The notes under the pieces were generated by a model that saw nothing but the letters and a program-made list of their open reading frames with translations, did no database searches and was not told where the DNA came from. Made by a program: the position numbers and the translations under genes. DNA of 51,721 nt. Origin: Cyanophora paradoxa CCMP329. Taxonomy: Eukaryota; Plantae; Glaucophyta. This document shows, piece after piece, positions 2,331-34,345 of this stretch (positions within the stretch are counted from its first letter, which is position 1; each line of letters begins with the position of its first letter). The stretch covers positions 1-51,721 of the forward strand of contig QPMI01000336.1 of the NCBI GenBank assembly GCA_004431415.1, read 5' to 3'.

Positions 2331-2336
2331 GCGGGT

Positions 2337-3260
2337 GGGGCTGCACGGGCGGGCTTGGCGTGAGCTGGCGGCGTCAGCGGCGTCGCGGCGTCGTGCCCTC
2401 GCGCCTGAGGCCCTCGGGGCGGCCCGGCGCGGGCTCCTGCGGCGGGGACGCGGCGGGCGGGCGCGGAGCGCGGGCGGGGCTGCACGGGCACGGGCAGGCT
2501 TGGCGTGAGCTGGCGGCGTCGGCGGCGTCGCGACGTCGTCCTTCGCGCCCGAGGCCCTCGGGGGCGGCCCGGCGCGGGCTCCTGCGGCGGGGCGCTCGGC
2601 GGGCGGGCGCGGAGCGCGGGCGGGGCTGCACGGGCGGGCTTGGCGTGAGCTGGCGGCGTCAGCGGCGTCGCGGCGTCGTGCCCTCGCGCCTGAGGCCCTC
2701 GGGGCGGCCCGGCGCGGGCTCCTGCGGCGGGGCGCTCGGCGGGCGGGCGCGGAGCGCGGGCGGGGCTGCACGGGCGGGCTTGGCGTGAGCTGGCGGCGTC
2801 AGCGGCGTCGCGGCGTCGTGCCCTCGCGCCTGAGGCCCTCGGGGGCGGCCCGGCGCGGGCTCCTGCGGCGGGGACGCGGCGGGCGGGCGCGGAGCGCGGG
2901 TGGGGCTGCACGGGCGGGCTTGGCGTGAGCTGGCGGCGTCAGCGGCGTCGCGGCGTCGTGCCTCGCGCCTGAGGCCCTCGGGGGCGGCCGGCGCGGGCTC
3001 CTGCGGCGGGGGACGCGGCGGGCGGGCGCGGAGCGCGGGCGGACTGCACGGGCACGTGCAGGCTTGGCGTGAGCTGGCGGCGTCGGCGGCGTCGCGACGT
3101 CGTCCCTTCGCGCCCGAGGCCCTCGGGGGCGGCCCGGCGCGGGCTCCTGCGGCGGGGCGCTCGGCGGGCGGGCGCGGAGCGCGGGCGGGGCTGCACGGGA
3201 ACGGGCGGGCTTGGCGTGAGCTGGCGGCGTCGGCGGGCGGCGGGCGGGCGCAGAACGCGG
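2337..3260. repeat. Tandem satellite, ~140-146 bp unit, ~6.5 copies
   Basis: The unit ggggctgcacgggc...ggcttggcgtgagctggcggcgtc...gaggccctcgggggcggcccggcgcgggctcctgcggcgggg starts near 2337, 2477, 2622, 2762, 2902, 3041 and 3187. Confidence 0.92.
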
Positions 3261-4590: not shown

Positions 4591-7500
4591 TTAGAGAGAA
4601 GTTAGTTTTCCCCTCGAAAACCACTTTTTCCCCTCGAAAACCACTTTTTCCCCTCGAATTCGACGCTCGAAAGTCGAGGGCTGACGAGAGACGACCGGGC
4701 TCGGCGGAAGGTCCGCGATTTCGTACTCAGTGACCGTCGGCGCGACCGACGCGACTGTCGCGCCGTTGACAATGACGTTGTAGCCCTGGAGGCGGCCGGC
4801 ACTGAAGGCCTTGCCCGTGGGCCGGTTCCACTTCAGGGTGGCGCTGCTCGCGGAGCTGGGCGCGGCGGAGAGCTGCAGGGCGGAGCTCGGGTCCGACGGG
4901 GCGCTCGCTGCCAGCTGGAACGAAGCTGTCTCGGCGGCGCCAGACGGGCCCATGGGTACGACCTTCAATAAAAAGAAATCAGCCTGGCAGCAGACGGGAT
5001 CTGGAAGATACGGAAAAAATATTTCAAAGACCTGGTACTTCGTAGTGGAGCCCGGAATAGCGGCCGGGACGAGGACGGTAGTCTGGGTCCCTGGAACCAC
5101 GGTGATGACCTGCGCGAAATAATATACCATGATAAGCCCATTTGATGAAAAGTCCATCATTCGACAATTCAAGATACGTAAGCGCAAATGTTGGATGTAC
5201 CTTGCCGTTCGCCATCACAGCATACGTGTTAGCGGGGCCGCGCGCGGGGTGGCTCCATGATAGCGCGCTGCTGCCGCCGCGTCCGCCAGCGCTAGTAGAA
5301 GTGAGGCGTAGATTCGAGGGAGCCTTTTCGTCAGGGGCCGCCCCGGAAGCACCCACAGCGGCCAGGCTCGCAGCCGACGGCACTGCGTACGGGTCTGTGC
5401 TGCTGGCGAACGCGCCTGCTGCAGGCGAGGTCGAGGTCGCCCGACCGGAGGGGCCGCTGCGCGGACCCGCTGCCGTGGCGTACAGGCCGTCCGAGCCCGA
5501 CGCTGCGCCTCCATACCCGGCGCCGCTCAGGGCAGCCGCTCCCACGCCAGCGTACGGGCCCGTCCCGAAGCCGGATCCGGAGCCGCTGCTGACTGGGTTC
5601 GAGGCCGGGCCGAGCGCGCCGTTGGCCGCGACCGGCGCAACCTGGTAGACGCTGCCGGGCTCGCCGCTCCTCGGCGAGACGTCGAAGGAGGTCTGGCTGG
5701 CCGGGACGGTGCCGAGGACCTTGCCGTCGCCGATCACCGCGTAGCTTGCGGGGCTGCCCGCGCGAGGGCGGCTCCACGAGAGGCGGCCCGACGAGCCGAA
5801 GAGGCCCGGCGAGGTCGTGAGCTGCAGGTTCGACGGCGCCATGTCCGCGGGGCTCGCGGGCCCGCGCCGGAGCCGGCCGGGTAGGAGGCCAGCGGCACGC
5901 TGTTGCTCGGGGCCCGCGGGGCTGCCCGACGACGAGAGCGGCACCACCGAGAAGTACGAGTTGGCCGCCGCGCTCGGGCTGAGGCCCTTGGGCGCAAACG
6001 TAGTGACGCCCGACGGCGAGGCCTTGACGGTCGCAACCTGGCGGCCGTCCTGCAGGACGCCGAAGCTGCCGCGCGAAATCGCGTCAGCGCCCGGACCACC
6101 GCGAAACGCGCGCGAATCGCGCGTCCCGCACCTCGCGACGTTGCCCAGGCCGCTCGGCGAGGTCCACGCGAGCAGCGCGCTCGGGCTGGAGCCCGAGCCC
6201 GCCGGCGTCGAGGTCAGCGCGATGCCGGAGCTCGGGTCGCTCGGGAGCGAGGCCGCGAGCGGCGACGAGACCGGGCCCGCGACGCCGTTGCTGTCGAACG
6301 GCACCACCTGCAGGGTCGAGGCGCCGCCGTTGGTCGGCAGGCCTGAGAGCGGGGCCGAGGTCTGGTTGCCCGCGACCGACGCCACGGGCTTGCCGTCCTG
6401 GAGGACAGTGTACGACGCGGGCGAGCCCGAGGCGGACGCTTCCACGAGAGGGTGGCGGAGCCGGAGCCGGAGCCGCTGCCGGTGAAGCTGCTGAGGCGAG
6501 GCTCGACGGGGCGAGCGGGCTGGGGGCGGGGGCGTCCACGCCGGAGCCGGCGATGCCCGCGCCGGGGCCGGAAGCGGGGCCGTACGGGCCGGCACCAGCG
6601 CCAACAAAGCCAGGCGCGCTAGCGCCGCTGTAGGCGGGCGCAGGGCCGAGCCGCTGGAGGCGGGGTTCGAGGCCGGGCCGAGCGCGCCGTTGGCCGCGAC
6701 CGGCGCAACCTGGTAGACGCTGCCGGGCTCGCCGCTCCTCGGCGAGACGTCGAAGGAGGTCTGGCTGGCCGGGACGGTGCCGAGGACCTTGCCGTCGCCG
6801 ATCACCGCGTAGCTTGCGGGGCTGCCCGCGCGAGGGCGGCTCCACGAGAGGCGGCCCGACGAGCCGAAGAGGCCCGGCGAGGTCGTGAGCTGCAGGTTCG
6901 ACGGCGCCATGTCCGCGGGGCTCGCGGGGCCCGCGCCGGAGCCGGCCGGGTAGGAGGCCAGCGGCACGCTGTTGCTCGGGGGCCCCGCGGGGCTGCCCGA
7001 CGACGAGAGCGGCACCACCGAGAAGTACGAGTTGGCCGCCGCGCTCGGGCTGAGGCCCTTGGGCGCAAACGTAGTGACGCCCGACGGCGAGGCCTTGACG
7101 GTCGCAACCTGGCGGCCGTCCTGCAGGACGCCGAAGCTGCCGCGCGAAATCGCGTCAGCGCCCCGGACCACCGCGAAACGCGCGCGAATCGCGCGTCCCG
7201 CACCTCGCGACGTTGCCCAGGCCGCTCGGCGAGGTCCACGCGAGCAGCGCGCTCGGGCTGGAGCCCGAGCCCGCCGGCGTCGAGGTCAGCGCGATGCCGG
7301 AGCTCGGGTCGCTCGGGAGCGAGGCCGCGAGCGGCGACGAGACCGGGCCCGCGACGCCGTTGCTGTCGAACGGCACCACCTGCAGGGTCGAGGCGCCGCC
7401 GTTGGTCGGCAGGCCTGAGAGCGGGGCCGAGGTCTGGTTGCCCGCGACCGACGCCACGGGCTTGCCGTCCTGGAGGACAGTGTACGACGCGGGCGAGCCC

Positions 7501-10500
7501 GAGGCCGGACGCTTCCACGAGAGGGTGGCGGAGCCGGAGCCGGAGCCGCTGCCGGTGAAGCTGCTGAGGGCGAGGCTCGACGGGGCGAGCGGGCTGGGGC
7601 GGGGGCGTCCACGCCGGAGCCGGCGATGCCCGCGCCGGGGCCGGAAGCGGGGCCGTACGGGCCGGCACCAGCGCCAACAAAGCCAGGCGCGCTAGCGCCG
7701 CTGTAGGCGGGCGCAGGGCCCGAGCCGCTGGAGGCGGGGTTCGAGGCCGGGCCGAGCGCGCCGTTGGCCGCGACCGGCGCAACCTGGTAGACGCTGCCGG
7801 GCTCGCCGCTCCTCGGCGAGACGTCGAAGGAGGTCTGGCTGGCCGGGACGGTGCCGAGGACCTTGCCGTCGCCGATCACCGCGTAGCTTGCGGGGCTGCC
7901 CGCGCGAGGGCGGCTCCACGAGAGGCGGCCCGACGAGCCGAAGAGGCCCGGCGAGGTCGTGAGCTGCAGGTTCGACGGCGCCATGTCCGCGGGGCTCGCG
8001 GGGCCCGCGCCGGAGCCGGCCGGGTAGGAGGCCAGCGGCACGCTGTTGCTCGGGGGCCCCGCGGGGCTGCCCGACGACGAGAGCGGCACCACCGAGAAGT
8101 ACGAGTTGGCCGCCGCGCTCGGGCTGAGGCCCTTGGGCGCAAACGTAGTGACGCCCGACGGCGAGGCCTTGACGGTCGCAACCTGGCGGCCGTCCTGCAG
8201 GACGCCGAAGCTGCCGCGCGAAATCGCGTCAGCGCCCCGGACCACCGCGAAACGCGCGCGAATCGCGCGTCCCGCACCTCGCGACGTTGCCAGGCCGCTC
8301 GGCGAGGTCCACGCGAGCAGCGCGCTCGGGCTGGAGCCCGAGCCCGCCGGCGTCGAGGTCAGCGCGATGCCGGAGCTCGGGTCGCTCGGGAGCGAGGCCG
8401 CGAGCGGCGACGAGACCGGGCCCGCGACGCCGTTGCTGTCGAACGGCACCACCTGCAGGGTCGAGGCGCCGCCGTTGGCCGGCAGGCCTGAGAGCGGGGC
8501 CGAGGTCTGGTTGCCCGCGACCGACGCCACGGGCTTGCCGTCCTGGAGGACAGTGTACGACGCGGGCGAGCCCGAGGCCGGACGCTGCCACGAGAGGGTG
8601 GCGGAGCCGGAGCCGGAGCCGCTGCCGGTGAAGCTGCTGAGGGCGAGGCTCGACGGGGCGAGCGGGCTGGGGGCGGGGGCGTCCACGCCGGAGCCGGCGA
8701 TGCCCGCGCCGGGGCTGGATGGACCGGAGGGCACAAAGCTGCCAGAGGAAAGGCCGGCAGGGGCGGGGGAACGCGAGGTCGCCCGACCGGAGGGGCCGCT
8801 GCGCGGACCCGCTGCCGTGGCGTACAGGCCGTCCGAGCCCGACGCTGCGCCGCCATACCCGGCGCCGCTCAGGGCAGCCGCTCCCACGCCAGCGTACGGG
8901 CCCGTCCCGAAGCTGGATCCGGAGCCGCTGCCGACTGGGTTCGAGGCCGGGCCGAGCGCGCCGTTGGCCGCGACCGGCGCAACCTGGTAGACGCTGCCGG
9001 GCTCGCCGCTCCTCGGCGAGACGTCGAAGGAGGTCTGGCTGGCCGGGACGGTGCCGAGGACCTTGCCGTCGCCGATCACCGCGTAGCTTGCGGGGCTGCC
9101 CGCGCGAGGGCGGCTCCACGAGAGGCGGCCCGACGAGCCGAAGAGGCCCGGCAAGGTCGTGAGCTGCAGGTTCGACGGCGCCATGTCCGCGGGGCTCGCG
9201 GGGCCCGCGCCGGAGCCGGCCGGGTAGGAGGCCAGCGGCACGCTGTTGCTCGGGGGCCCCGCGGGGCTGCCCGACGACGAGAGCGGCACCACCGAGAAGT
9301 ACGAGTTGGCCGCCGCGCTCGGGCTGAGGCCCTTGGGCGCAAACGTAGTGACGCCCGACGGCGAGGCCTTGACGGTCGCAACCTGGCGGCCGTCCTGCAG
9401 GACGCCGAAGCTGCCGCGCGAAATCGCGTCAGCGCCCCGGACCACCGCGAAACGCGCGCGAATCGCACGTCCCGCACCTCGCGACGTTGCCCAGGCCGCT
9501 CGGCGAGGTCCACGCGAGCAGCGCGCTCGGGCTGGAGCCCGAGCCCGCCGGCGTCGAGGTCAGCGCGATGCCGGAGCTCGGGTCGCTCGGGAGCGAGGCC
9601 GCGAGCGGCGACGAGACCGGGCCCGCGACGCCGTTGCTGTCGAACGGCACCACCTGCAGGGTCGAGGCGCCGCCGTTGGTCGGCAGGCCTGAGAGCGGGG
9701 CCGAGGTCTGGTTGCCCGCGACCGACGCCACGGGCTTGCCGTCCTGGAGGACAGTGTACGACGCGGGCGAGCCCGAGGCCGGACGCTTCCACGAGAGGGT
9801 GGCGGAGCCGGAGCCGGAGCCGCTGCCGGTGAAGCTGCTGAGGGCGAGGCTCGACGGGGCGAGCGGGCTGGGGGCGGGGGCGTCCACGCCGGAGCCGGCG
9901 ATGCCCGCGCCGGGGCCGGAAGTGGGGCCGTACGGGCCGGCACCAGCGCCAACAAAGCCAGGCGCGCTAGCGCCGCTGTAGGCGGGCGCAGGGCCCGAGC
10001 CGCTGGAGGCGGGGTTCGAGGCCGGGCCGAGCGCGCCGTTGGCCGCGACCGGCGCAACCTGGTAGACGCTGCCGGGCTCGCCGCTCCTCGGCGAGACGTC
10101 GAAGGAGGTCTGGCTGGCCGGGACGGTGCCGAGGACCTTGCCGTCGCCGATCACCGCGTAGCTTGCGGGGCTGCCCGCGCGAGGGCGGCTCCACGAGAGG
10201 CGGCCCGACGAGCCGAAGAGGCCCGGCGAGGTCGTGAGCTGCAGGTTCGACGGCGCCATGTCCGCGGGGCTCGCGGGGCCCGCGCCGGAGCCGGCCGGGT
10301 AGGAGGCCAGCGGCACGCTGTTGCTGGGGGGCCCCGCGGGCTGCCCGACGACGAGAGCGGCACCACCGAGAAGTACGAGTTGGCCGCCGCGCTCGGGCTG
10401 AGGCCCTTGGGCGCAAACGTAGTGACGCCCGACGGCGAAGCCTTGACGGTCGCAACCTGGCGGCCGTCCTGCAGGACGCCGAAGCTGCCGCGCGAAATCG

Positions 10501-19500: not shown

Positions 19501-22500
19501 CTTGGGCGCAAACGTAGTGACGCCCGACGGCGAGGCCTTGACGGTCGCAACCTGGCGGCCGTCCTGCAGGACGCCGAAGCTGCCGCGCGAAATCGCGTCA
19601 GCGCCCCGGGCCACCGCGAAACGCGCGCGAATCGCGCGTCCCGCACCTCGCGACGTTGCCCAGGCCGCTCGGCGAGGTCCACGAGAGCAGCGCGCTCGGG
19701 CTGGAGCCCGAGCCCGCCGGCGTCGAGGTCAGCGCGATGCCGGAGCTCGGGTCGCTCGGGAGCGAGGCCGCGAGCGGCGACGAGACCGGGCCCGCGACGC
19801 CGTTGCTGTCGAACGGCACCACCTGCAGGGTCGAGGCGCCGCCGTTGGTCGGCAGGCCTGAGAGCGGGGCCGAGGTCTGGTTGCCCGCGACCGACGCCAC
19901 GGGCTTGCCGTCCTGGAGGACAGTGTACGACGCAGGCGAGCCCGAGGCCGGACGCTTCCACGAGAGGGTGGCGGAGCCGGAGCCGGAGCCGCTGCCGGTG
20001 AAGCTGCTGAGGGCGAGGCTCGACGGGGCGAGCGGGCTGGGGGCGGGGGCGTCCACGCCGGAGCCGGCGATGCCTGCGCCGGGGCCGGAAGCGGGGCCGT
20101 ACGGGCCGGCACCAGCGCCAACAAAGCCAGGCGCGCTAGCGCCGCTGTAGGCGGGCGCAGGGCCCGAGCTGCTGGAGGCGGGGTTCGATGCCGGGCCGAG
20201 CGCGCCGTTGGCCGCGACCGGCGCAACCTGGTAGACGCTGCCGGGCTCGCCGCTCCTCGGCGAGACGTCGAAGGAGGTCTGGCTGGCCGGGACGGTGCCG
20301 AGGACCTTGCCGTCGCCGATCACCGCGTAGCTTGCGGGGCTGCCCGCGCGAGGGCGGCTCCACGAGAGGCGGCCCGACGAGCCGAAGAGGCCCGGCGAGG
20401 TCGTGAGCTGCAGGTTCGACGGCGCCATGTCCGCGGGGCTCGCGGGGCCCGCGCCGGAGCCGGCCGGGTAGGAGGCCAGCGGCACGCTGTTGCTGGGGGG
20501 CCCCGCGGGGCTGCCCGACGACGAGAGCGGCACCACCGAGAAGTACGAGTTGGCCGCCGCGCTCGGGCTGAGGCCCTTGGGCGCAAACGTAGTGACGCCC
20601 GACGGCGAGGCCTTGACGGTCGCAACCTGGCGGCCGTCCTGCAGGACGCCGAAGCTGCCGCGCGAAATCGCGTCAGCGCCCCGGGCCACCGCGAAACGCG
20701 CGCGAATCGCGCGTCCCGCACCTCGCGACGTTGCCCAGGCCGCTCGGCGAGGTCCACGCGAGCAGCGCGCTCGGGCTGGAGCCCGAGCCCGCCGGCGTCG
20801 AGGTCAGCGCGATGCCGGAGCTCGGGTCGCTCGGGAGCGAGGCCGCGAGCGGCGACGAGACCGGGCCCGCGACGCCGTTGCTGTCGAACGGCACCACCTG
20901 CAGGGTCGAGGCGCCGCCGTTGGTCGGCAGGCCTGAGAGCGGGGCCGAGGTCTGGTTGCCCGCGACCGACGCCACGGGCTTGCCGTCCTGCAGGACAGTG
21001 TACGACGCAGGCGAGCCCGAGGCCGGACGCTTCCACGAGAGGGTGGCGGAGCCGGAGCCGGAGCCGCTGCCGGTGAAGCTGCTGAGGGCGAGGCTCGACG
21101 GGGCGAGCGGGCTGGGGGCGGGGGCGTCCACGCCGGAGCCGGCGATGCCCGCGCCGGGGCCGGAAGAGAGAGCGTACGGAGAAGTTGAATCGAACGGCGC
21201 GCCGTTGCCGGCGCCACTGTAAGGGCCAGGTGCCGGGCCTGCACTTGATACAGGACGGGTGGCAGGGCCGACGTTTCCGTAGCGATCGAGAGGCGCAACC
21301 TGGTAGACGCTGCCGGGCTCGCCGCTCCTCGGCGAGACGTCGAAGGAGGTCTGGCTGGCCGGGACGGTGCCGAGGACCTTGCCGTCGCCGATCACCGCGT
21401 AGCTTGCGGGGCTGCCCGCGCGAGGGCGGCTCCACGAGAGGCGGCCCGACGAGCCGAAGAGGCCCGGCGAGGTCGTGAGCTGCAGGTTCGACGGCGCCAT
21501 GTCCGCGGGGCTCGCGGGGCCCGCGCCGGAGCCGGCCGGGTAGGAGGTTAGGGGCACGCTGTTGCTAGACTGCCCAATGGGTACGCCGTTGGGGTTTAGA
21601 GCCACGATCGAGAAAAGAGATGCAGAGTGCGCGGCCGAGCTCGAGGGCAGGACGCCCTGGTTGAGGAGCCCGTTGACGCCGGACGGGGAGGGCTCTACAG
21701 AGGCCACCTTCACGCCATCCTTTAGGACAGCAAAGCTGCACGAAGAGGAACAATTGTAAATTAAAGGTGTATATATTCCCGGAGTCGACATCAGCGCATA
21801 TCGCGCACCTCGCGAGGTCGCCCGAGGTCGACGGAGTCGTCCACGACAAGATCGCACTGCGGCTCGCGATCGTCTCGGGGCCGGAAACAGTCGATGTCAA
21901 GACCATGCCTGTTCTCGGGTCGCTGGGAAGCGTGGCAGAAAGCGGAGCGGAGGCAGGCCCGACGACGCCGTTGCTGTCGAACGGGACCACCTGCAGGGAC
22001 GTTGCGCCACCAGAGTTCGGCAGGGCAGAGACCGGCAGCGACGTCTGATTTCCTGGAACGCTGGCGATGGGGAAGCCGCCCTTGAAAATGGTGTAGCTTG
22101 CGGGAACACCGACGTCTGGGTGGCTCCACGAGAGTGTGGCCGATCCGGGGCCGCTGCCGTTGAAACTGCTGAGGGCGAGATTGGAAGGAGCGAGGGGGTG
22201 GGGAGCCTGGGCTCTAATTCCAGAGCCGGCAATGCCCGCGCCGGGCGACAGCGGAGTGGCCGAGCTCGAGGCGCCGGACGGGTCGCTGCCGCTGACAACA
22301 GGTTGCGACGCTGGCCCAGAAGAGCCAAAGCGGTCGATGGGAAGAACCTGGTAGACGCTGCCGGGCTTGGGAGAGACCTCGTACGCCGTCTGGTTGGCGG
22401 GGACGGTGCCAACGACCCTCCCGTTCTCCGTCACGGCGTAGCTGGCAGGGTAGCCAGCTGCTGGCGGGTTCCACGAGAGGCGGCCCGACGAGCTGAAGAG

Positions 22501-25500
22501 GCCCGGCGAGCTCGTGAGCTGCACGCCGCTGGGCATCATGGCCGTCTGCGGCGCCGTGCCGGCGCCTGAGCTGAGAGGGTACGAGAGCAGGGGCACAGTG
22601 CCGCTGGCCGAGCCTATGATGTCGCCAGCAGGTGAAATTGGCGCGACGGTGAAGAGCGGCTCGCGATCGACGCTGGTGCCACTCGGCAGATTCTTGACGA
22701 TGAACGAGTTGATGCCGGAGGGAGACGGCTTGACGGTGCCGATCTGACGTCCGTCCTGCATAACGGCGTATCTGCAGAAAGAAGAAGCGTCAGACTGCGG
22801 TTCCAGAAATTGCTCTCCCTAGAAACTTCAGCAATCGCTCACCCTGGAGGGCCGCCTGCGCCGCTTCGGAGGTCTCCAGCAGGCGTGGTCCACGAGAGGA
22901 GCGCGCTCGGGTTGCTCGCGTTGCCGGTGGGCGTTGAGGTGAGGGCGATGCCAGTCGTGGGGTCGCGGGGAAGCGTTGCGGCCAGCGGCGATGAAGATGG
23001 GCCCGCATAGCCCTTCTCGTCGAAAGGAACGACCTGAAGCGTCGACGGGCTGCCATCGGTCGGCAAGTCGGAGACCTGAATCGAGTTTTGGCTGCCAGGC
23101 ACGAATCCGATGGGGCTCCCATTCTTGAGAACGGTATAGCTGCTCGGAGTGCCATTCTGAGGCGGGCGCCACGAAAGGATGGCGGAGCCGGAGCCGCTGC
23201 CGTTGAAGCTGCTGAGGGCGAGGCTCGACGGGGCGAGCGGGCTGGGGGCGGGGGCGTCCACGCCGGAGCCTGCAATGCCCGCGCCGGGGCCGGTGGCGGG
23301 GTGGTACGGGCCAGGAGCGCCCATCCCGGGATCATTCGACACGGGCAGCGACGGAGGGCCGACGTTGCCGAAGCGGTCGATGGGCAGGACCTGATAGACT
23401 CTGCCGCCACGCGGCGCATCGGCCGATGTTGCACTGCCAGAAACTGTACCGGAAATCTCCCCGTCGCTGACGATTGCGTACTTGGCCGGGTTCCCGCTGG
23501 AGGGAGGGTTCCACGAGAGCTTGCCGGGCGAGCCGAAGATGCTCATACCGGCGGCTCCGGTGAGCTGCAGGCCAGTTGGAGCCATCGATGGCTGGCTGGC
23601 GTTCGGGCCGGCGCCGGAGCCTACAGGGTACGCCGACAGAGGCGCCTTGTTGCTAATGGCGCCAATGACCTCGCCGCTGGGCGAGATGGGCGCCACCGAG
23701 AACAGGGTCTCCTCGCCAGGGACGAGCCCAGGGTTCCGAACGACGAAGGAATTCACAGCACCCCGTGTCGAGATCGGACTCGGGGGCTTGACCGTGCCAA
23801 TTTGCTGTCCATCCCTGAAAATTGCGTAGCCGCCAATACCAGCGCCGCCGGCTGCGCCAGTGGAGGGCGTTCTCCAGGCGAGATGGCCGCTCGAGCTCGG
23901 CCCGGGGCCCATCGGCTGGGATGTTAGTGCAATACCGTTGCTGGGATCGCTGGGAAGAGCCGCTGCAAGCGTGTGCGAAGGGGGGCCGGACACGCCATTG
24001 CCATCAAAAGGAACGAGCTGCAGCTTGGTGTACTCGCCGTTGGTGGGCAACCCAGACAGGGGGTACTCCGTGCGGTCGCCAGGGACGGTCCCGATGGGCT
24101 CTCCATCCTTGAAGATGGTGTAGCCCGCGGGCTGCCCTGCCAGTGGCGGCGTCCACGAAAGCATGCCGGAGCCAGAGCTCGAGCCCCTCCCGCCGTCGCT
24201 TGTCAGGCCGACGTTGGACAGGGCGAGGTTAGACGGGGCGAGCGGGCTCGGGGCGGGGGCATCCAGCCCCGAGCCCGGGAAGCCCGCGCCCGGTCCGGTC
24301 GGGCTGTACGGTGTCTTCCACAGGCCGCCGAGGTCCCGCGAGCCAGCTGCAACGCCCGTGGCCTCGGCGTTTCCGGCACCGGTGGCAGCGCCGGTGCCCG
24401 TGCGTGTGTACCAGTCGTACGGGGCGGTCTTCTTGTCACTTGGGGAAATGAAGGGCACGCGCAAGGTGCCCTTGACGATTGCAGCGGTGATGCCGACGAC
24501 GAGAAGGCCGGCGGCACCGATGCCAAACGCGAGCGGTAGAATGTGCGACATCTGCACCGGCATTTCTTTCTAAGATTTATTTGCAGCAGAGATGTGCGTG
24601 TGGATACCTGGTTGCTGTTGCCCTGGCCCGCCTCGCCGTCTTGTGGCGGAAGCCCGCCGGAGCTCGGAGCGAACGCAGGCTGGTTCGGCGTGAAGAAGTT
24701 CGGGATGATTTGGCCGAGGGTGAACTGCGCAAAATTGAGCATATTAAAAGAGAACTCAAGCGGTAGCTGGCGCTTCAAACTTGCCGTGGTCTGCGCGAAG
24801 GCAAAACGTTAACCGTCACATGCATCGATGTAAGCAAAAATGCACTTGAAAACTTCTCGCACCAGATGCGTGCAGAATCCACGAGCGTACCAAATTTGCT
24901 GTCCCTGCGCACGAATTTCGCTTTCTAGATCTGCACCTAGAGAAGTGCAAGAGAAGTGCATAATCTATTAATCTATTACGCACATTAATCTCGAGCTGGA
25001 AAAGATCTCCGGCGTTGGTCGCGGTGGGATCGGGATTCTTTGCATCGCCAAGCTGGAGATGGATATCGGTTCAGCAACAGCACGCATTGAATTTTGACCC
25101 TCTCACGTGTAAACCCCGCGCACCCACATGTTGATCTTCGGCTTCAGCTTCGTCTGACATGGCATCCAGCTATTCAAGGTCTCGTCCCAGTAAATGAGAT
25201 ACTGCTGCTCCGTGGGCATGGACACTTGCGTCACGGGATACGGGATCTCGATGATGATCGGCGTCGAGTCCGGGAGGCCCGAGATGCGGGAACCGAGCAC
25301 CTGAGCGAAGGGCATCAGTAGGCTGGCTGGATGTTTAATTCCTACTTGCATTGTGTTGGTGTCTACGTTATAGCCTACATATATGCTTTAAGAGTAAGCA
25401 CAGGGCACCGAAATGTCGACGAAGCCACCCGTGATCTTGACATCGCCCTTGACCGCTCCGCCTTCGGGCCCCCTCCACACGGCCGGCCACGGGGACCTCT

Positions 25501-28500
25501 CCATGTTCAGAACGGACACACCAAACCTGCCGCGGATTTGGCAACATGTCCGCTTCGATGCGGGCTCGGACGAACCCGTCCTGGGTTCCGTTATTAGGCA
25601 CGAAGTCACGGACTGCAAACGGGAGCTTGACGAGCGCAGGGTTTACGCCGAATCCGCCTGAGACGGTCGGAAAGTCGTAATAGCGCCTGTGTTCACGATC
25701 GGATCAAATTGCTAGACGACCGCGGCCGCGTACGGTGCATTTTGAATGAGAAGACTCAGCTATACATGCGCACCTTATGTCTGTGAAACAAACTGCACGT
25801 ATGCGAGGGAGCGTTCAATGTTAGCATCTACGGCTGCAGTGCAACGGCGCTAGCGGGATTCACAGCATACGCACTCTTCCCAGCAGTCTGTTGTTTCGGA
25901 CGTAGGATAACCAGGTCGTCAGCCGAGTGCACGTGTTTCAGGTTAATGATGAAGCACATATGCATGTTCATGGCTAATTCCCAGAAAATATCATTTCCGA
26001 TCATAAATATTTAGGCGGACATTATTAAGATTATTCCAGTGATAAGGCGTTATAACCGCAGAGAAACAAATGCATCAAGCACCACAGCGGCGGCTTCGGC
26101 GGATGTGTTTCTGATTCCGTCTTCGCACTTTCGGCAGCTGCGAAAATGAAAAGCGATTGAGTTTAGCGGCTGATCATGGATTCCAACTCTCGACGTGAAA
26201 CGTTTGACAGGATGAAAGCGCACTTGGCAAAGCGGCCTTGGGGCGCCTTGATCAGAGTGTTGAGCAGGTTTGCAAGCGGGCTGGCCGACGCCTCGGTTTG
26301 CCCGGTGAGGCCCGTGCCGGCGGTGCTGACCCAGTCCGGACTCGAGATGGCGGCGGACATCGCCACGAGGGCCTGCGTATTTGCACGTTGTTGGAGTGAG
26401 GCTGGGTAATAGATTGCTCCGAAGTAAAATGAGGTTTCATAACGAAATCGTACCTCTTTCAGATACACGCTGAGATCGAGGTTCACGAAATCGCAGGGGT
26501 CGAGTTGCGGCTTGCAGCTCGACAGTTGTATCATCATCGTCGAATTTAGGTACCTGGCTTCACAATCACATGCGACAAAATTAAAGGACACACATAAGGG
26601 TAAAGGTTCACTCGGAAGAGGAATCTGCTAAATTGTTGATGGCAGTAATGACGCCCTGGAGCTCCGGGTACGAGGCCACAATGTCTCCAGAGGCTTTGGC
26701 ACGGTTCCGGGAGCGATCTGCGGCAGTTGCAGCCGAGCACACATCGTTGATCAACGTTGCCAAGCACGGAGGCCGCCCTGCGCACCCGAAACTGAATATT
26801 AATCGAAATTCTGAGACTGTCACTGCATGCGCACGAACGGCCAAAACTAGTAATTATAATGCACCTTCGCCCTTAAAGTTCTTGCTCAGGGCGCTGATTG
26901 CATCGCTCTCCAAAATTGTCTTCTGCTGCTCGACAATGGCGCCCGAGTCGAACTGCTCCTTTATCCAAACCATGCGAATTTCGTAGGTCGAGCAGGCATC
27001 CGGCGGCTGGACGACCGTGATACTCAGCGGAACATCTGCTCGAAGTCGTGGATCAATTATATTATTAGCAATGCAAAAACGAGACTGTTATAAAAAAGTA
27101 CCCGAGCAGATACAGCCGTTGCTCGAGCAGATGGTCGCTGTAAGCGCATGCGTGCCGACGGGGAACAGATAGGAGGGAATCATGACGTTGCTCTCTTGGG
27201 GCTTGACCAGAACCTCAGACGTCTTGTCCAGCTAATTATATAAAAACTGAACATTAGAAAGATCCATACCACACAATTTTAATTATACGTGTGCTCACCT
27301 TGAGGGAATAGTTGAGTGGAAGCGCCCCGGAAGGCGGCTTCCAGTCGGAGCACGTGACTGTGAAGCGCGTCTCGAGGAATGTACCCTCCGTAGGCGACAC
27401 CGTGCACGTTCCGGGATCAACCAACGCCGACCGTCCGACAAGGCGTATGGTAGCCTGATCGGAGACCGCGGGAGGGGATGCGCCCGGACTGCCAGGATCG
27501 GGCGCCGTCGCAGAGCATCGCTGCACAGCACGGCCGCGACCGCGGGCGAGAGATCAATAGAGGTGAGAAAGACTCGCGACGAAAACCACGCACGATGACG
27601 TATTCTCTGTCTGCAAAAGATAGAAAGCGATCACGTGTTAAAGTTAGAGAGAGATCAGGCACGTCGTAAAGTCTCTTGAAGCAATGAAAATGTACAATTG
27701 CAATCATTAAGACTCACTGTACTCAAAGGCCGGGCGGGAGTCTGGAGTGAAGAACAGGGAGTCTTCGACTCTTGAAACTTGCCTGTAGTACCTGTATATA
27801 CGTGTCCGATCGCGAATGCGAGCCGTATGCACGCGTACGCATGAGCTTCCAAATCCAAACACACAAAATCAACACCGCACAGAAATGCGCACGGGGACCT
27901 GTCAAGATCCGCCAGGATGGACTCGCCGTTTGGCGCGGACCAGGTATGGACGGCGACTGTGGGGAATGCGTCATAGTTGAGAGCCGAAGAGGTGCAGCGA
28001 ATGACGATCTTTTGATTGATGCAGACGCTGTCGGCGGCCCCTGGAGGCGGCGAGACCTCCACCTTCGAAGTGTTTTATAATTAGTATTCAACCGATCGCG
28101 AACACGCGTACAATTGCTTTATTATAACCAGCTACACAGCTCGAGCTCCGCGTGAGCACCTGGACCTTGACCTGCAAGGCAGGGGTGGGATTTGTGGGAT
28201 TTGTGGGGCCTGTGGGATTTGTGGGATTTGTGGTATTTGTGGTGTTTGTGGTGTTTGTTGTGTTTGTTGTGTTTGTTGTGTTCGTTGTGTTCGTTGTGTT
28301 TGTTGTGTTTGTTGTGTTTGTGGGGTGTGTGGGGGGTGTGGTGGGTTTCGGGAGAACTTGCAAAGGGCAGTCTGTCACAAGGAAGTCCCTGCTGCTCTCG
28401 CGATAACCGCCTGAATTCGAAGTGGCAATTGTGAGAGACTAGTTCAACCAGTCGATCTTTATCTCACCAAAGCGGTTGAGTGCACGGAGGAGAACGCGGT

Positions 28501-31500
28501 GCACGCGATTCGGGATGCAGAGGAAATCTCTCCCGCCGAACGGCTCCTCGAGGGTTTTGATGTCGAAACTCGTTGCGTCGCGAGGGATTTTTCTGATCGT
28601 ATTCACTACGTTCTCGTGATCTACGGCTGCGTCAAGATCCTTGTATTCGGGTTTCAGCGGATCCGCCGTGGTCGCTAGGGGCTGCTGGCCCAAGTCTTGA
28701 AGCTGAGCGATGGCCCCCGCGACCGTCATGATAAGGGATTTTCCATTTTCCATTTAACGATAGTAGCAATCGTAAGCTCGAAACCGCACCCGAACGATAA
28801 GCATGTCATAGCCATACGGCGTGTGGTGGCCGTCGGTCGGATTCTCCCACTCGACAATGTAGTCGCTTCCGATGGGCTTCGGTTTCGGAGCTGCAGCACG
28901 AGTGCGCTTCACAATCATGCAAATGCCTGTATGTATTTGAGCCGTGGAGGGACAAACCTGTCCAGGCTTGGAAGTCCGTCCACTTTGTTGCGTTGTCTTT
29001 GGAGAAGACGTAGGCGAATTGCGCGCTAAGGCCGTCTCTGGAGATGATTTTCGCCGCGTGACGGTTTTTCCAGTCAAACCACAGCTCAATCATGCTGATG
29101 TCGTCGGCCTTGTCGCCCACAGCCTGCTTCGGCGGCTGATTGGGGGCAGTGATTGGATCCGCCATGACGTTCTTCCCAGGAACGCCACCAACAGGCCGAG
29201 GAGTACGACCTGTCCCCGCCCTCGCCAGTCCAAGGCTGTGCTCCTCACCCACAAGCCTGCGCAATGGCAATGAAGTAAGGGACAGAATTGTTCGGGCTAT
29301 CGCGACCCAAGCATTTATATATACATATACGCACGCAATGTAGCAACGATCTGCAAGACGCGACGAGATTAGGAGCCGTACGCGTTATCATGATATATAT
29401 ATATATAACATGACCCCACCGAGAATGAATCCGCCTGCACCGACGGCCGCGACGGTGTCTTTTGCAGTGGAGACGCTGGGATGCGGCGCCCCAGGTTGCC
29501 TCAAAATTTCATTTTTGGTTGCTGCGTGTTATCGTCCATATCGATCGAATCACAGGGTGAATTCAAATCAAGCTCACGTACCAAAGTATTCTGTGTCCGG
29601 GAAGTACCCGTTTAGTGTGCATCAGTTAAGCGTGCTATATCTAGATAGTAAGAGGGACATAAATCACACCTCCGTAGGTCGTGTTGCCATATCCAACATA
29701 ACCAGACGCATCCTCCATCCAGTTGCTCGCATCCCACCGCTGCCTGCGCAGAGGTGTCATGTGCATGCTAAGGCTTGCAATGGAGCAATGAAATCGAACA
29801 TGCCTTGAAGGGCCCCAGTGGATGTAATTCTTGCTGAGACGATCGATCCCTGCCGTGTCTAAAGTGGTGACATCCGCTGTGTCGAGCCCGGCAAGGGTTC
29901 CTGCACGGATCAAATGATAGTCGGCAGCTGCGACCGCGGGGCTCACGATCGAAGAATATTAACTACTGCCATACCGAGCTGCTGATCGTTGTCCGGATCT
30001 AGTCCTCGCAAATAATACTTAATTTGCTTCACTCCGTAGGTGAAGCCGGCCGAACGTCCCGGATTATTGAAACTGCAAACCACAGTACGTTCGGCAGCAA
30101 GCACAGATTGAATCGCGAGCCACGCGCAAACACGCACAGCAGAGTGACATCGACGTAGATCTGGAAGTACTCATTGGTCTCGTGGAAAAAGTAACTGTGA
30201 AATGCGTAAGGCGCAGACATTGGTAGTTGCAAGCTGCTTGTAAACCGCTCACGTTGTGGTGATGTTCAATTGACTTTGCTGTGCTTGGTGCACAATCGTG
30301 ATGCCGTCGGGCTCCGTGATGTTCTTTATTATTTTCCCCTTGAATGGTTCCACGAAGCCCAAGTCTTCCTGCAGGCGCCGACCATATGTGGGCAGTCATG
30401 ACTATACAATCGCGCTCGGAATTCCAAGCGCACCAATACTGTGCCATATCCGATGTTCTTGTACTGTTTTGCCCCAGCTCCGGTGTCAACTCCGATGCCC
30501 CAGCCTTCGACCTGAAAAACGATTAGGTAATTATATGTATAGAATTTAAACCCGCGAGACGAATTCTTATGTGGATGCATATATACGCACAGGCAAACCG
30601 GGAGTCTGAATTCGAAGGCAGGGAACGAAATGAACGTTAGAGAGAGCCGCTGGAATGATCATCGAAAACATAGTTCGAGACGTCGACACGTGCATGTACG
30701 CACCACATAGTCCTGATCATAACAAAACAAAATGAACGAACAGTGTCAGCACGCTGCAGAATAAAGGCTAGAGAAACAAACAGCAGAGAAAAATATAGCG
30801 CACTCCGCAGTACGGCATTTGCCTGAAAGAGTGCGCAAGCAATGGGTGAGAATAAAGCAGATTGCTTTCGGAGCGACATAGATTGCGAATATCGATCTAG
30901 GATAACGACAAGAATCTGCTTAGAATCTAAAGCGGTGTACCCTGCAGCTATTCAAAAAAAGTGGTCTAGATCTCACCGGCCGGTCTTGCATCCAGTTCCT
31001 TTCGTGCAATCGGCTTCAGCCGCGACGTAGTCATCGAATTCTGATCGGTACCGAGAATAAACAGAAGCTAGAATGAGTCCTCACAAACGAGAATAAAGCT
31101 AAAACCGCTTACGAGGCCACGTGTTCCACTGTTATAGAGAGATCGAGTCGGGAACGTAAACCGGGACCATCGTTATGGTCAGATCTAGAAGTCTTTCGAT
31201 TCGGCATGTGCGACAGACTGAGAGCTCACCCCGTCACGATCCGCGTCGACGAACAAGCCGAAGCCCTGGCGACGGTTCTGCGAGTACCCGATTGGGAGAT
31301 ACGGGCTGACGTATGGCGAGTACTGCGCGCTTCCGAACGAAGCCTCGGCTCCTTGGATCGCGACCATGATAGACTTGCCGAAGACGAAATAGTCGTATTG
31401 ATCATCCAGTTTCGTGTCCGTCCTGAAAGGAATGCTCGGATAGGTAGTGCGAATGACGGTACCGGCTTCTGAAGGCTTAATCGCTGCACAAGAGCATCAA

Positions 31501-34345
31501 CCAACGGAGAATTTCAGAGGTTGTACCGCACACATACCGAGATGTCCACGGATCTATTAATATACGAATTTGCATGGATTTGTGTGAAGAAAAAATAGCA
31601 AGGGGGAGAATCACGCATTACCTCGAATAGAGGCATGAACTGCTGGCGTTGATGCTCTGTGCAGTACCACCTGCATCGGGGCTGGCGATCGTACTGTGCT
31701 GGCAAAAGCTGGAATACTGCGCATGGAGCACGGACATGGGCGAAATCCAAGTCGTTGTTTTGGAGTTGTAGTCTTCCCAAAGGCCGAAGCGCGTGTTGGG
31801 TTCTTCGGCCTTAAATAAGCCAGCAGTCGCTTGGGTAGACGATACGTCCTGATCCGCGCGACGATTGTATTCGAGTTGCCTGCACATGCATGTCATGCAT
31901 ATGGCGGCCGAATCAAGAAAGGAAATGTTCCAATGACAACAATAATCACCCCATGATATGTCCAAGCCACCTTGATGGGGGAACAAGTCAGTGCGCATAA
32001 ATACTTATTTGCAAGCTAAAGCATCGAAGAAACAGCAGTTTAGGCCGAACCTTGGAAAAGAGTGGCCTCCCGCCTTGGGGTCGGGGAAAACGACGTTGGG
32101 GGCTTCGTTCGGATTCGGCGGATTCCAAGATTTTGTAGCGGTCGCGTAGATTTTCAGGTTGGCGGCGGATGGGTGGCGCTCGCTGCGCAATATTCAATCA
32201 ATTGCATTTCCGCCCCCGAAACACTTCGTATTTTGTCGACGAACGGACCCGAACCACTTGCTGACGGCATAGTCGTACTCTGCGATACAAATCAGGATAC
32301 GAAGCGTGCAGAGAACTTCGAAGCAGAACGCACCCTCCTGGCCAGGCGCAGGGACTTTGTTCCATTTGGGATCATAATATGTCGCAAGCTGCACATGAAA
32401 GCTCGTTAAGTACTAGCACAGTGTTTGATGCCGTAGGTTTTTCATGTCACCGAATCAAGAAACCCAACGCGCGTACCGAGAACAGCCCTATAAATATCCT
32501 CAATGGAAATCGTTCAGAAGAAACGCGTCAAGAAAAGCAGGTGAGCATGAGCGATCGAGAAAAAGCAAGAAGCAAATCATGATCACCGTCCGCGACATCT
32601 GTGCGCCGGATGCTGCCGGATCACGAATCAACGCCGGGCATGTACAATGCACAGGAAACAATATGCAATGTCTCACCGGAGGCAGTACTGAAGTCCGGAG
32701 GCATGGAGTCGGCGTGAGTGAAGCGTGCTCGTGATCATGATGTACATGGAAAGCGCGCACGGCATCATATATAGTAATCGGCTCGCTGCACTGAACATAA
32801 ACGTCAAGCGTTTTGGTTGTGGAATCTGTTCGAATTCGGCTTCGTGAGGATTCGAAAAAAAAAGTATATGTAGGAGTAGAACTCGTTGACCGCGAGTGGT
32901 GGCATCTACGGTCACAGACCCGCAGACACCAAAGAGTGGGAAATCTTTCGGCCGTTTCTGGAGGAGACGCCAGCATCCAATTCACGCATGCCACTTGAAA
33001 CGAACAAGCAAAACACCTGATATGCGCTGTTGACGTAGGTCGGGACTCTGTAAGCCGCTTCCAATTTCTCCGCGCTCTGGCAAGCGCCATCGGTAGCGCA
33101 AGGCCATCCATGTCCGCTCCGACCGCGATTCGATTTAACGACAGAGACCTGCAGAACGCGATTAGAAAAAGGTACTGAACGCGACAGCAGGATCCGAATA
33201 TCGATGATGCAAATTAAATGGCGGCATTGCAACGTCGGACCTCGAAAACCCAGTTTTTAGGGAGGGTGGTCGAGAATCCGTTAGCTGGGTCATATATCGT
33301 CGACGTGTCCGGGAAATAGAGTCTTCGGGAGCCGGAAGTTAAAAACGAACTCATGAACGCATTCGAAACCTTGAAGTACTTGAGGATCGCACGTAAAATA
33401 GGCGCTCGTCATGTTGTAGGGCGCGTTCGTGTACCGCATGCTGCACCGCGGAATTACAAGAGCCCGATGCTAAACCCCAGACGCTTTGAACTCACCAGTG
33501 GAAAAAGTCAGCTGTGGGGCGAATGCGAGCGTTGGGTTATCAGGATTCGTGTTGTTGGTCGCAGAGAGAATAAACATTATGATTAACTCACACGTCGGTC
33601 CGCGGGCCTCGACGATTTGAATATTAACGCCAGTTGTGCCGTCAATTCGATATGTCGAAGGAACTTCCGCTGTAATCCCGTCTTTGAAGCAATAGGTGTT
33701 GTAGCGATATTGGCCATCGATCTCCCAGTAATTGCCGATGCGACCTTGGTCTGCGACATATATGTGTCACTTGAGCACTTGGTCTCCATGCTCACACGGA
33801 CGATCGATATCATTGATCTTGGAAAAAGACGACGTACGCATGTAGAAAGAGCTTTCTTGCGGGCTTTTTGCTGCACTGGCGGGCTCGCCGCCATCGCTCG
33901 TGCCGTTGCCCTTGAAGTAGGTCGATACGATTGGCTGCATCCGTTGTCGTTGGTCGCGATCGCATCGATATCGCTGTCAGGTGGCAATATTAATAGAGCT
34001 CGAGATTACCTTGTCTCCTGGTAGCCCGTCCGAGAACCGAATGCCAGGGCGACCCTGGACACCACTGCGAGGCGGCGATGCGCCCCCCAATACACGAGTC
34101 AGTCTGAGTTAGCTAAACAGCGATCTCACCATCGACAACGCTAACGCGCGTGCGCATTGAGCGCATTAAAACACGCACACGGGGCCCATGTCTCCGCACT
34201 GCTTCGGGGTTGTACACGCCGCCGCCGAAACCGAGGCGACAACGAACGCTGACAGAACAAGTACCAGTGTCGCTAGAACGAACGAGGCCGCACTGCTTTG
34301 CTGGCCTGTGGTGGCGCGCCGGCCGAAGCCGCGCGCCGTCGCCAT
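4591..34345 (-). CDS. Giant multi-exon single-pass receptor: REJ + GAIN/GPS (polycystin-1/adhesion-receptor-like ectodomain), 1 TM, cytoplasmic array of ~53 FN3-like domains; 3' end uncertain
   Basis: Many junctions join in frame by manual GT/GC-AG splicing. Landmarks: ATG 34345 with a signal peptide; REJ motif DPGTCTVSPTEGTFLETRFTVTCSDWKPPSGALPLNY (~27300-27420); GPS motif YLIYWDETLNSWMPC...GFCTHL|TT|FTLG (25205-24715); TM 24542-24474; then FN3-like repeats. Introns checked for frame: 24791-24862, 24725-24784, 24552-24607, 22772-22842, 21736-21808 and the 67-nt repeat intron. Not every junction in 25600-34180 was resolved. Confidence 0.75.
4606..4658. repeat. 20-bp tandem repeat (ttttcccctcgaaaaccact), ~2.6 copies
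   Basis: Read directly from the sequence. It lies next to an imperfect direct duplication at 4425-4482 and 4521-4572. Confidence 0.9.
5430..21570 (-). repeat. Near-identical coding tandem array: 13 full units (short 1075 bp = 1008 exon + 67 intron; long 1201 bp) plus flanking partial units, each encoding 3 FN3-like domains
   Basis: 14 copies of the intron GTGCGGGACG...CTGAC...GGCAG, with low coordinates 20655, 19580, 18505, 17431, 16231, 15157, 13957, 12884, 11686, 10485, 9411, 8211, 7137 and 6066. The domains follow the pattern APSxL...LSW..P....Y.V..DG..V..V....TS.....L......QV.P....G..GP.S. Confidence 0.95.
24474..24542 (-). other. Single transmembrane helix
   Basis: ILPLAFGIGAAGLLVVGITAAIV (23 uncharged residues) followed by K, R and KK, so the positive-inside rule favours a cytoplasmic C-terminus. 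Confidence 0.8.
24715..25330 (-). other. GAIN/GPS autoproteolysis motif region
   Basis: ISGLPDSTPIIIEIP...YLIYWDETLNSWMPC...LFQLEIN|GQQIWYARGFCTHL|TT|FTLG gives the H-L-T-x-F consensus just before the TM helix. Confidence 0.8.
26860..28090 (-). other. REJ (receptor for egg jelly / polycystin-1) module
   Basis: GTCTVSPTEGTFLETRFTVTCSDW..S.ALPLNYSL matches the REJ hallmark G-x-C-x-V-x-P-x2-G-x3-T-x-F-x3-C-x2-W-x-D/P...PLxY. It is followed by YLFPVG..ALTATICSSNG and then a helical region, as in REJ-GAIN proteins. Boundaries are approximate. Confidence 0.8.
28186..28350 (-). repeat. Coding 9-bp microsatellite: (NTT)x~10 plus NPT repeats, mucin-like stalk rich in N-glycosylation sequons
   Basis: Plus-strand gttgtgttt/gtggtgttt repeats at 28230-28319. 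The minus frame reads PKPTTPPTHPT(NTT)n NPTNPTGPTNPTNPTP and is in frame with the preceding exon (RFG|GYRESSRDFLVTDCPLQ). Confidence 0.85.
28960..31475 (-). other. Ectodomain module resembling bacterial surface/adhesin proteins, split over many micro-exons
   Basis: Spliced translation: FVFGKSIMVAIQGAEASFG...LPIGYSQ...GFGLFVDADRDG|WNTWP...DYV|TPGLP|VEGWGIG...YYLRGLDPDNDQ...YFATKNEILRQPG...DDISMIELWFDW...SAQFAYVF. The family resemblance is from recall, not from a search. Confidence 0.5.
34181..34345 (-). CDS. First coding exon of the giant receptor, with signal peptide
   Basis: MATARGFGRRATTGQQSSAASFVLATLVLVLSAFVVASVSA|AACTTPKQCGDMGP: basic N-region, hydrophobic core, small-residue cleavage site (VSA), followed by a GT donor. 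Confidence 0.75.

What the first reader, a model, noticed from the sequence alone, without database searches (positions are those of the whole stretch)
4591..34345. Candidate new receptor architecture: polycystin-like REJ-GAIN/GPS ectodomain, one TM, and a titin-like cytoplasmic tail of ~53 FN3-like domains
Seen in sequence: signal peptide, REJ motif, GPS motif and TM, then an in-frame spliced tail of about 6000 aa with no further hydrophobic segment. The manual count is 18+17+17 FN3-like domains of three types plus one partial. Established: in polycystin-1 family proteins the GPS and TM1 are followed by a PLAT domain and 10 more TM helices; adhesion GPCRs have 7TM; cytoplasmic FN3 on a receptor is rare (integrin beta4 has four). 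Inference: a self-cleaving adhesion or mechanosensory receptor whose output is a ~200-nm elastic tether or scaffold rather than a channel or G-protein module. I do not recognise this architecture from described families.
Basis: partly seen in the sequence, partly recalled or inferred. Interest (0 to 1): 0.92.

Follow-up and report, generated by a model that had tools for sequence, protein, structure and literature searches.

The report
Giant one-pass receptor, inner FN3 tail
The alga Cyanophora paradoxa has a gene for a very large protein that crosses a membrane once, with an outer part resembling the human kidney protein polycystin-1 and an inner chain of 53 bead-like domains; no such design was found in the papers searched, but this copy has lost its normal end and no RNA for it was found.

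Summary
The gene is real. It lies on the minus strand (34345→4591) in Cyanophora paradoxa, and the model is about 7,950 aa. It has a signal peptide, a REJ hit (E 1e-9), a GPS-like HL|TT-F motif, one TM and 53 FN3 domains (AF2 pLDDT 84; Z 12).

Two corrections. The tail is not in frame as assembled: 18 single-base deletions in G/C runs, probably PacBio errors, bring a stop at aa 3719. The 3' end is cut at about 4689 by a high-copy element, removing about 150 aa that three paralogs keep (one more FN3 and a CxxC hydrophobic cap).

Public models of paralogs join GPS, TM and FN3 and have Leu where this gene has ATG 24551, so a separate tail gene is unlikely. GAIN/GPS rests on motif only: Pfam and fold searches were blank. 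A cytoplasmic tail is inferred from hydropathy and charge, not tested. The two RNA-labelled runs laid on the 3' part show no transcript.

Best reading: a self-cleaving anchor with an elastic cytoplasmic tether and no signalling domain. Single-TM REJ-GPS proteins are known (sea-urchin REJ1/8/9); the giant inner FN3 tail was not found in the papers searched. The scan noted paralogs on other contigs before (s1-511101, s1-509581).

The parts
34179..34345 (-). Exon 1: ATG, basic n-region, hydrophobic h-region and likely signal-peptidase site near aa 41
   Evidence: no SignalP available
28468..34064 (-). About 37 small exons (model) for a ~950-aa head of unknown family; micro-exon boundaries uncertain
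   Evidence: self-trained HMM; Pfam and Atlas blank on single exons
28191..28343 (-). 9-nt tandem repeat coding a (T-N-T)n / P-T linker, a run of N-glycosylation sequons
27102..28062 (-). REJ-like region; Pfam REJ hit on exon 27299-27520
   Evidence: E 1.2e-9, profile 314-351 of 452
26083..27035 (-). Helical-looking region in the place of GAIN subdomain A
   Evidence: inference from position and sequence pattern; no Pfam hit
24608..25686 (-). GAIN-B/GPS-like region: exon 25300-25124 (W..W..C), 24904-24863 (C-x-HL), 6-nt exon 24790-24785 (TT) followed by a GC-AG intron, exon 24724-24608
   Evidence: conserved and joined to TM in paralog models P0011 and P0097; no Pfam GPS hit
24552..24607 (-). 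56-nt GT-AG intron between the GPS region and the TM exon; same junction in paralogs, which have Leu instead of Met after it
24474..24542 (-). Single transmembrane helix, aa 1711-1733; 0 K/R in the 15 residues before, 4 K/R in the 15 after
20722..24245 (-). First, diverged FN3 triplets (types A-B-C) on exons 24551-22843, 22771-21809 and 21735-20722
   Evidence: Pfam fn3 E 2.4e-11; AF2 and fold searches; dN/dS 0.29-0.45
5201..20721 (-). Homogenised array: 14 near-identical 66-67-nt introns; exons of 1008 or 1134 nt, short type about 99% identical; 18 single-base deletions in G/C runs
4690..5109 (-). Terminal exons 5109-5032 and 4962-4690: end of FN3 52 and incomplete FN3 53
   Evidence: exact match in two DNA runs
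4400..4689 (.). High-copy element abutting the gene (summed contig depth about 16,000 against 31-77); 32 codons read through into it to the stop at 4591-4593; left end not mapped

Best explanation
One gene of a Cyanophora-specific family encodes a type I membrane protein of about 780 kDa. Shown in sequence: signal peptide, unknown head, glycosylated linker, REJ, GPS-like motif, one TM, and 53 FN3 domains arranged as A-B-C triplets on 34-90-aa Gly/Ser/Pro/Ala linkers. Inferred: (1) the ectodomain faces the outside or an alveolar lumen and the ~590-kDa tail lies in the cytosol; (2) the GAIN-like domain cleaves itself at HL|T in the ER and the halves stay non-covalently joined, as in polycystin-1; (3) with no channel, 7TM, kinase or TIR domain found, the output is mechanical. 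The head holds an outer ligand, the tail is an extensible tether to a second membrane or the cortical skeleton (epiplast, microtubules), and the cleaved GAIN acts as a load-limited release point. In intact paralogs a conserved C-terminal CxxC hydrophobic cap is the likely distal anchor (acylation or metal/disulfide dimerisation). This copy has lost that cap to a repeat insertion and may be a weakened or condition-specific member.
For: No gap above 195 nt in the modelled gene from 34345 to 21736, and canonical splice sites. Paralog models P0011/P0092 and P0097 join GPS, TM and FN3 and have Leu at the Met position. Only two strong hydrophobic peaks, and positive-inside charge bias. HL|T lies 44 aa before the TM. 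FN3 fold: pLDDT 84, Foldseek E 5e-8, VIA Z 12.2 at 1.6 A. Purifying selection: dN/dS 0.29-0.45; synonymous excess among recent copies (16 of 34, p=0.016) with no nonsense change. The same FN3 type occurs in P0030, a CBM20-like plus coiled-coil protein with no evident signal peptide. The same TM-FN3 cassette sits behind an IPT/TIG ectodomain in P0014. Conserved cap in P0010, P0013 and P0099. Cyanophora has alveoli, sutures and an epiplast (PMC6212826).
Against: No transcript: four RNA-labelled runs hold next to none of the words of 24400-34345, and two of them gave nothing but 18-23-nt chance pieces on 4400-10390. GAIN/GPS is unconfirmed by profile or structure. Topology is untested; tail sequon content is neutral (9 against 9.3 expected). 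The middle ectodomain model has 14 exons of 20 nt or less and could hide breaks. The 3' end is truncated. The tether role has no direct evidence.
Confidence: 0.55

Rival explanations
1. This locus is a silent or decaying paralog of the family. The architecture is real in the family, but this copy no longer makes a working protein.
For: Real truncation of about 150 conserved aa by a high-copy element, bridged by contigs in 2012 and 2024 DNA runs. 18 frameshifting deletions in the assembly. No RNA contigs.
Against: All deletions shorten G/C runs, none are insertions, and all lie in the ~99%-identical units where short-read polishing cannot place reads; the assembly is PacBio RSII/Quiver (PMC6704402). 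Contigs of both DNA runs put back the two G missing near 5907-5912, although these contigs pool several copies. No nonsense change among 34 variants, and a synonymous excess. Contigs drop rare sequence, so absence of RNA is weak evidence.
Confidence: 0.2
2. The FN3 array is extracellular or luminal and builds a surface filament such as a flagellar hair, as proposed for other giant FN3 genes of this genome.
For: Long FN3 arrays on membrane proteins are usually outside (established knowledge). Cyanophora has two kinds of mastigonemes (PMC6704402). Scan notes describe FN3-stalk genes here (s1-509139, s1-511086; not checked). Pro/Ser-rich linkers could be O-glycosylated.
Against: It needs a further TM or an inverted protein. 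Only two strong hydrophobic peaks exist; a weak third at aa 782 (1.64) contains Asp and Arg and depends on an uncertain micro-exon. Basic residues follow the TM. REJ, GPS and the sequon run lie before it.
Confidence: 0.1
3. Two genes: a secreted REJ-GAIN protein and a separate signal-anchored FN3 protein starting at ATG 24551.
For: Public models P0001, P0005, P0091 and P0096 start at the equivalent Met.
Against: Only 56 nt with canonical GT-AG ends separate the open exon 24724-24608 from the ATG. P0011 and P0097 have Leu there and run through. Even if it started there, the charge pattern still points the tail inward.
Confidence: 0.07
4. A signalling scaffold or recognition receptor rather than a load-bearing tether: shedding of the ectodomain changes what the many FN3 surfaces bind, in a fast-evolving multigene family used in one life stage, such as mating or defence.
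For: Family spread over at least 14 contigs with exchangeable ectodomains. REJ-GPS proteins are gamete-linked in sea urchin and Ectocarpus (PMC1934368, PMC4700764). The top Foldseek hit is the cytoplasmic FN3 triplet of the scaffold RIM-BP. Not seen in the RNA-labelled runs checked.
Against: Fourteen near-identical units add length, not binding variety. No catalytic or adaptor domain was found. The RIM-BP match is only fold-level (TM 0.25).
Confidence: 0.08

Closest known systems
Sea-urchin SpREJ1, 8 and 9 (single-TM members of the PKD1/REJ family; PMC1934368)
   Same: Signal peptide, REJ, GPS just before one TM
   Different: No giant cytoplasmic FN3 array is reported for them; here no C-type lectin, PKD repeats or PLAT were detected
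Polycystin-1 (PKD1) and PKDREJ; Ectocarpus Esi0130_0068 (PMC4810088, PMC4700764)
   Same: REJ-GAIN order, HL|T tripeptide, a single Cys pair in the GPS region
   Different: They have 11 TM with PLAT and a TRP-like part, or 6-7 TM; here one TM followed by 53 FN3
Adhesion GPCRs (PMC12716839)
   Same: GPS-like motif at the base of a large ectodomain
   Different: No 7TM; the strand after the cleavage site is followed by a ~35-aa polar linker, so a tethered-agonist mechanism has no evident target
Integrin beta4
   Same: Single-pass receptor with cytoplasmic FN3 domains that link to the cytoskeleton; structural match Z 11.2 to its FN3 pair
   Different: Four FN3 against 53; unrelated ectodomain; an obligate heterodimer
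Titin/twitchin and RIM-binding protein
   Same: Intracellular FN3 super-repeats; Z 12.2 to a titin FN3 and top Foldseek rank for the RIM-BP triplet
   Different: Not membrane-spanning; here beads on long low-complexity linkers, with no Ig or kinase domain detected

Membership tests
PKD1/REJ family | REJ domain | tested here: met
   Pfam PF02010 above cutoff (37.7 against 25 bits) on one exon, 38 of 452 profile positions only; full extent not testable because the joined model was not searched
PKD1/REJ family | GPS motif with HL|T/S shortly before TM1 | tested here: inconclusive
   Motif present and conserved in P0011, P0092 and P0097; no Pfam GPS hit; Atlas feature hit to a GPS cluster at 0.82 is a lead only
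PKD1/REJ family | GAIN fold | tested here: inconclusive
   Single-sequence AF2 of a paralog fragment: pLDDT 40, all-beta; no meaningful fold match
PKD1/REJ family | Autoproteolysis at the GPS | not testable with these tools
   needs protein work
Polycystin-1 proper (11-TM) | PLAT domain after TM1 and ten further TM helices | tested here: not met
   No hydrophobic peak of 1.5 or more in 6,219 aa after the TM; Pfam finds only FN3-type matches above cutoff
Adhesion GPCR | 7TM domain after GAIN | tested here: not met
FN3 superfamily | Seven-stranded FN3 beta-sandwich | tested here: met
   Pfam fn3 E 2.4e-11; AF2 pLDDT 84; Foldseek prob 1.0; VIA Z 12.2, rmsd 1.6 A over about 82 residues
Type I membrane protein with cytoplasmic FN3 (integrin-beta4-like layout) | N-out, C-in topology | tested here: inconclusive
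   Hydropathy and positive-inside bias agree; sequon test neutral; no topology predictor or experiment available
Titin-like rod | Continuous tandem domains with short linkers | tested here: not met
   16 measured linkers of 34-90 aa, 949 aa in total; the triplet model does not superpose on straight FN3 arrays (TM at most 0.36)
Functional expressed gene | Spliced transcript | tested here: inconclusive
   Nothing in four RNA-labelled runs by words or in two by laying contigs; contigs drop rare sequence

The most novel reading that the evidence does not exclude
Cyanophora uses a GAIN autoproteolytic junction purely as a mechanical fuse on a membrane-spanning elastic tether, 0.2-0.5 micrometres long. 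The cytosolic FN3 chain ends in a CxxC cap fixed to a second membrane or the epiplast, and the TM-FN3 cassette is swapped between different ectodomains. This would be a receptor class with structural rather than chemical output, and a model for GAIN function before its fusion to 7TM or channel domains.
Probability: 0.3. Interest if true: 0.85.

Novelty: new variant of a known kind. Interest (0 to 1): 0.62.

Why it matters
GAIN domains predate their fusion to 7TM receptors (PMC12716839), and what cleavage does without a tethered-agonist target is open. A REJ-GPS protein whose only detected inner part is a ~590-kDa FN3 chain would allow a direct test of the force-release role. It also offers candidates for the links between plasma membrane, alveoli and epiplast in glaucophytes. 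In practice, the public annotation cuts this family into fragments. The value of this particular copy is lowered by its truncation and the missing expression data.

Tried and rejected
Rfam on the window: nothing. Pfam GPS on the window exon and on paralog P0011: nothing. Homolog search with the P0011 GAIN region: only itself. PDB profile searches with the GAIN alignment and the REJ exon: nothing. A single-sequence AF2 of the GAIN fragment was too poor to use, and its fold matches were discarded. Atlas on a head exon: scores under 0.8. Metagenome scan with the REJ exon: no relative; the scan with the GAIN alignment could not run. No contig on record for P0011. L001, fetched through a 36-aa cluster member, looks like an unrelated animal contig and was not studied or searched further. 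The missing C-terminal FN3 and cap were not found in window 1-4700. The sequon test of topology was uninformative for the tail. A non-coding satellite was rejected: introns diverge while exons are conserved, and dN/dS is below 0.5.

Full report
Source. All strong protein matches are EukProt EP00741 Cyanophora paradoxa models from at least 14 contigs. The weaker matches that were looked up are FN3 proteins from other sources at about 30-37% identity. Twenty public runs of one organism (2012, 2019, 2024; labelled or guessed as DNA) hold all sampled words of 24400-34345. The 2019 assembly is PacBio RSII, Canu and Quiver with majority-rule Illumina correction (PMC6704402); that this window comes from it is my inference. 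The organism name was first suggested by scan notes and then confirmed here.

Gene model. A self-trained exon-intron model on the minus strand from ATG 34345 gives 59 small exons for about 1,707 aa before the TM exon. Introns are 49-195 nt (median 73), T-richer and GC-poorer than exons, with GTGCG/GTGAG donors and mostly GCAG acceptors; exon GC by codon position is 0.55/0.48/0.68. No gap is long enough for an intergenic region. Fourteen exons are 20 nt or shorter, so details of the head are uncertain. With N put at each missing base, the whole model is 7,952 aa with one terminal stop. The joined protein was used only in local scripts; remote searches went exon by exon.

Ectodomain. The N-terminus has a basic stretch, a hydrophobic core (KD19 2.55) and a small-residue cleavage region. 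A head of about 950 aa matches nothing exon by exon. A 9-nt repeat encodes a run of N-T-T sequons. Pfam REJ hits exon 27299-27520 (E 1.2e-9). A helical-looking stretch follows, then a beta-rich stretch ending in W..W..C…C-x-HL|TT-F, 44 aa before the TM. This fits the GAIN/GPS layout of polycystin-1, which is cleaved at HL|T and has one GPS disulfide (PMC4810088). Pfam GPS, a PDB profile search and fold searches on a poor model did not confirm it. GAIN is therefore a motif-and-position inference.

One gene, not two. The public models P0011/P0092 and P0097, from two other contigs, carry the same GPS motif, TM and FN3 array in one protein. They have Leu where this gene has Met 24551, at the same junction. 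They also read HL-TT-F, which supports use of the 6-nt exon and the GC-AG intron. Other public models start at that Met (P0001, P0005, P0091, P0096), which I read as annotation splits. These are predicted models, not transcripts.

Topology. Only aa 19-37 and 1715-1733 reach strong hydrophobicity. A weak peak at 782 contains charged residues. The TM has 0 K/R before and 4 after. With REJ, GPS and sequons on the N-side, the tail should be cytosolic. Sequons in the tail are at chance level, which decides nothing. A related FN3 type occurs in P0030, a CBM20-like (E 3e-4, below cutoff) plus coiled-coil protein without an evident signal peptide, so the domain is plausible in the cytosol.

Tail. There are 53 Trp motifs in A-B-C order. 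AF2 on the first triplet with a 100-row alignment gives pLDDT 84 and pTM 0.82 with three beta-sandwiches. Foldseek finds FN3 arrays (best E 4.8e-8, RIM-BP), and VIA gives Z 12.2 at 1.6 A to titin and fibronectin FN3. The triplet does not superpose on straight arrays (TM at most 0.36). Triplets are joined by 34-90-aa Gly/Ser/Pro/Ala linkers totalling about 950 aa. The tail is a string of beads: about 190 nm if the domains alone were laid end to end at roughly 3.5 nm each (my figure), and up to about 0.5 micrometres when stretched. Diverged units show dN/dS 0.29-0.45. The short-type recent exons are about 99% identical; across the recent exons 16 of 34 variant sites are synonymous against 28% expected (p=0.016), and none is nonsense.

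First correction: frame. Ten of 13 array exons and the following exon lack 1-3 bases, 18 in all; as assembled the first stop is at aa 3719. All are compatible with shortened G or C runs, none is an insertion, and none falls in the diverged units. Contigs from two DNA runs restore the two G missing near 5907-5912, the only indel listed; they pool several copies, so this is support, not proof. In run X7 the contig over the repeated intron has 12 times single-copy depth, close to the 14 copies assembled. In X1 it has only about 2 times, perhaps from GC bias. The tool warns that such depths are not copy numbers.

Second correction: the end. FN3 53 stops after its E strand at about 4689 and reads 32 codons into DNA with summed depth near 16,000, against 31-77 for the unique flank. 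Contigs of both runs match 4656-5461 exactly, so the junction is real. Three paralogs (P0010, P0013, P0099) align through this point and continue 146-159 aa: the rest of that domain, one more FN3, and a conserved hydrophobic end with C-x-x-C followed by an AAML motif. This piece is absent from window 1-4700. The end is hydrophobic rather than strongly amphipathic (moment 0.17-0.25).

Expression. Four RNA-labelled runs hold next to none of the 5' words. Two of them gave only chance 18-23-nt pieces on the array and 3' end, even though many copies should pool there. The gene is not detected in those runs, which does not show it is silent.

Mechanism. Shown: the anatomy, the FN3 fold, selection on the units, and the family. 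Inferred: ER cleavage with the halves staying associated; an outer head holding a ligand; a cytosolic elastic chain fixed by its cap to a second membrane or skeleton; release at the GAIN junction under load. Cyanophora is wall-less, with alveoli, sutures, epiplast plates and microtubules under the membrane (PMC6212826), which gives such a tether a plausible place. P0014 has a related TM and the same FN3 type behind IPT/TIG repeats, so the inner cassette looks modular. I give this reading 0.55, a decayed copy 0.2, an extracellular array 0.1, a signalling scaffold 0.08 and two genes 0.07.

Novelty. Single-TM REJ-GPS proteins are known (PMC1934368); REJ-GPS proteins occur in brown algae (PMC4700764); GAIN occurs outside holozoan GPCRs (PMC12716839); cytoplasmic FN3 occurs in integrin beta4. 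The searches found no paper on the combination or on FN3 proteins of Cyanophora; the library lacks most subscription journals. It fails the tests for polycystin-1 proper and for adhesion GPCRs, and is best filed as a new variant of REJ-GAIN receptors. The scan reported the same design on other contigs; those notes are not independent support.

Noticed in passing
window 39700-46000, minus strand: A GC-rich gene with DLEC1/CFAP65/HYDIN-type Ig domains (Pfam Ig_Dlec1_1, E 2.6e-11), a likely ciliary central-apparatus protein; it appears frameshifted in the assembly.
   Followed up: partly
window 47986-49155, plus strand: ORF with weak TPR matches (E about 1e-3).
   Followed up: no
window 1573-3236: Two GC-rich tandem arrays (39-nt x 19 and 140-nt x 6.4) that partly complement each other; possibly the interior of the high-copy element that cuts the gene.
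   Followed up: no
window 4400-4689: End of an element with 200-500 times single-copy summed depth and a 20-nt tandem repeat at 4606-4658; type not identified.
   Followed up: partly
window 24725-24790: The 6-nt TT exon and the 60-nt in-frame GC-AG intron: skipping the exon would remove the nucleophile, and retaining the intron would insert 20 aa after it. Paralog models use the HL-TT-F form.
   Followed up: partly
P0010, P0013, P0099 C-termini: Conserved CxxC hydrophobic cap ending these FN3 arrays; candidate acylation or dimerisation site.
   Followed up: partly
P0014 (tig00000396_g24884): About 3,200 aa of IPT/TIG-like repeats joined by a related TM to the same FN3 type: ectodomain swapping in the family.
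   Followed up: partly
P0030 (tig00000882_g5262): CBM20-like domain, several FN3 of this type and a coiled coil, with no evident signal peptide; a possible cytosolic starch-associated protein.
   Followed up: partly
window 5201-20721: Short (1008-nt) and long (1134-nt) exons alternate irregularly while even the introns are identical, pointing to very recent expansion or homogenisation; contigs with 8-10 differences at 30-70 times depth show close arrays elsewhere.
   Followed up: partly
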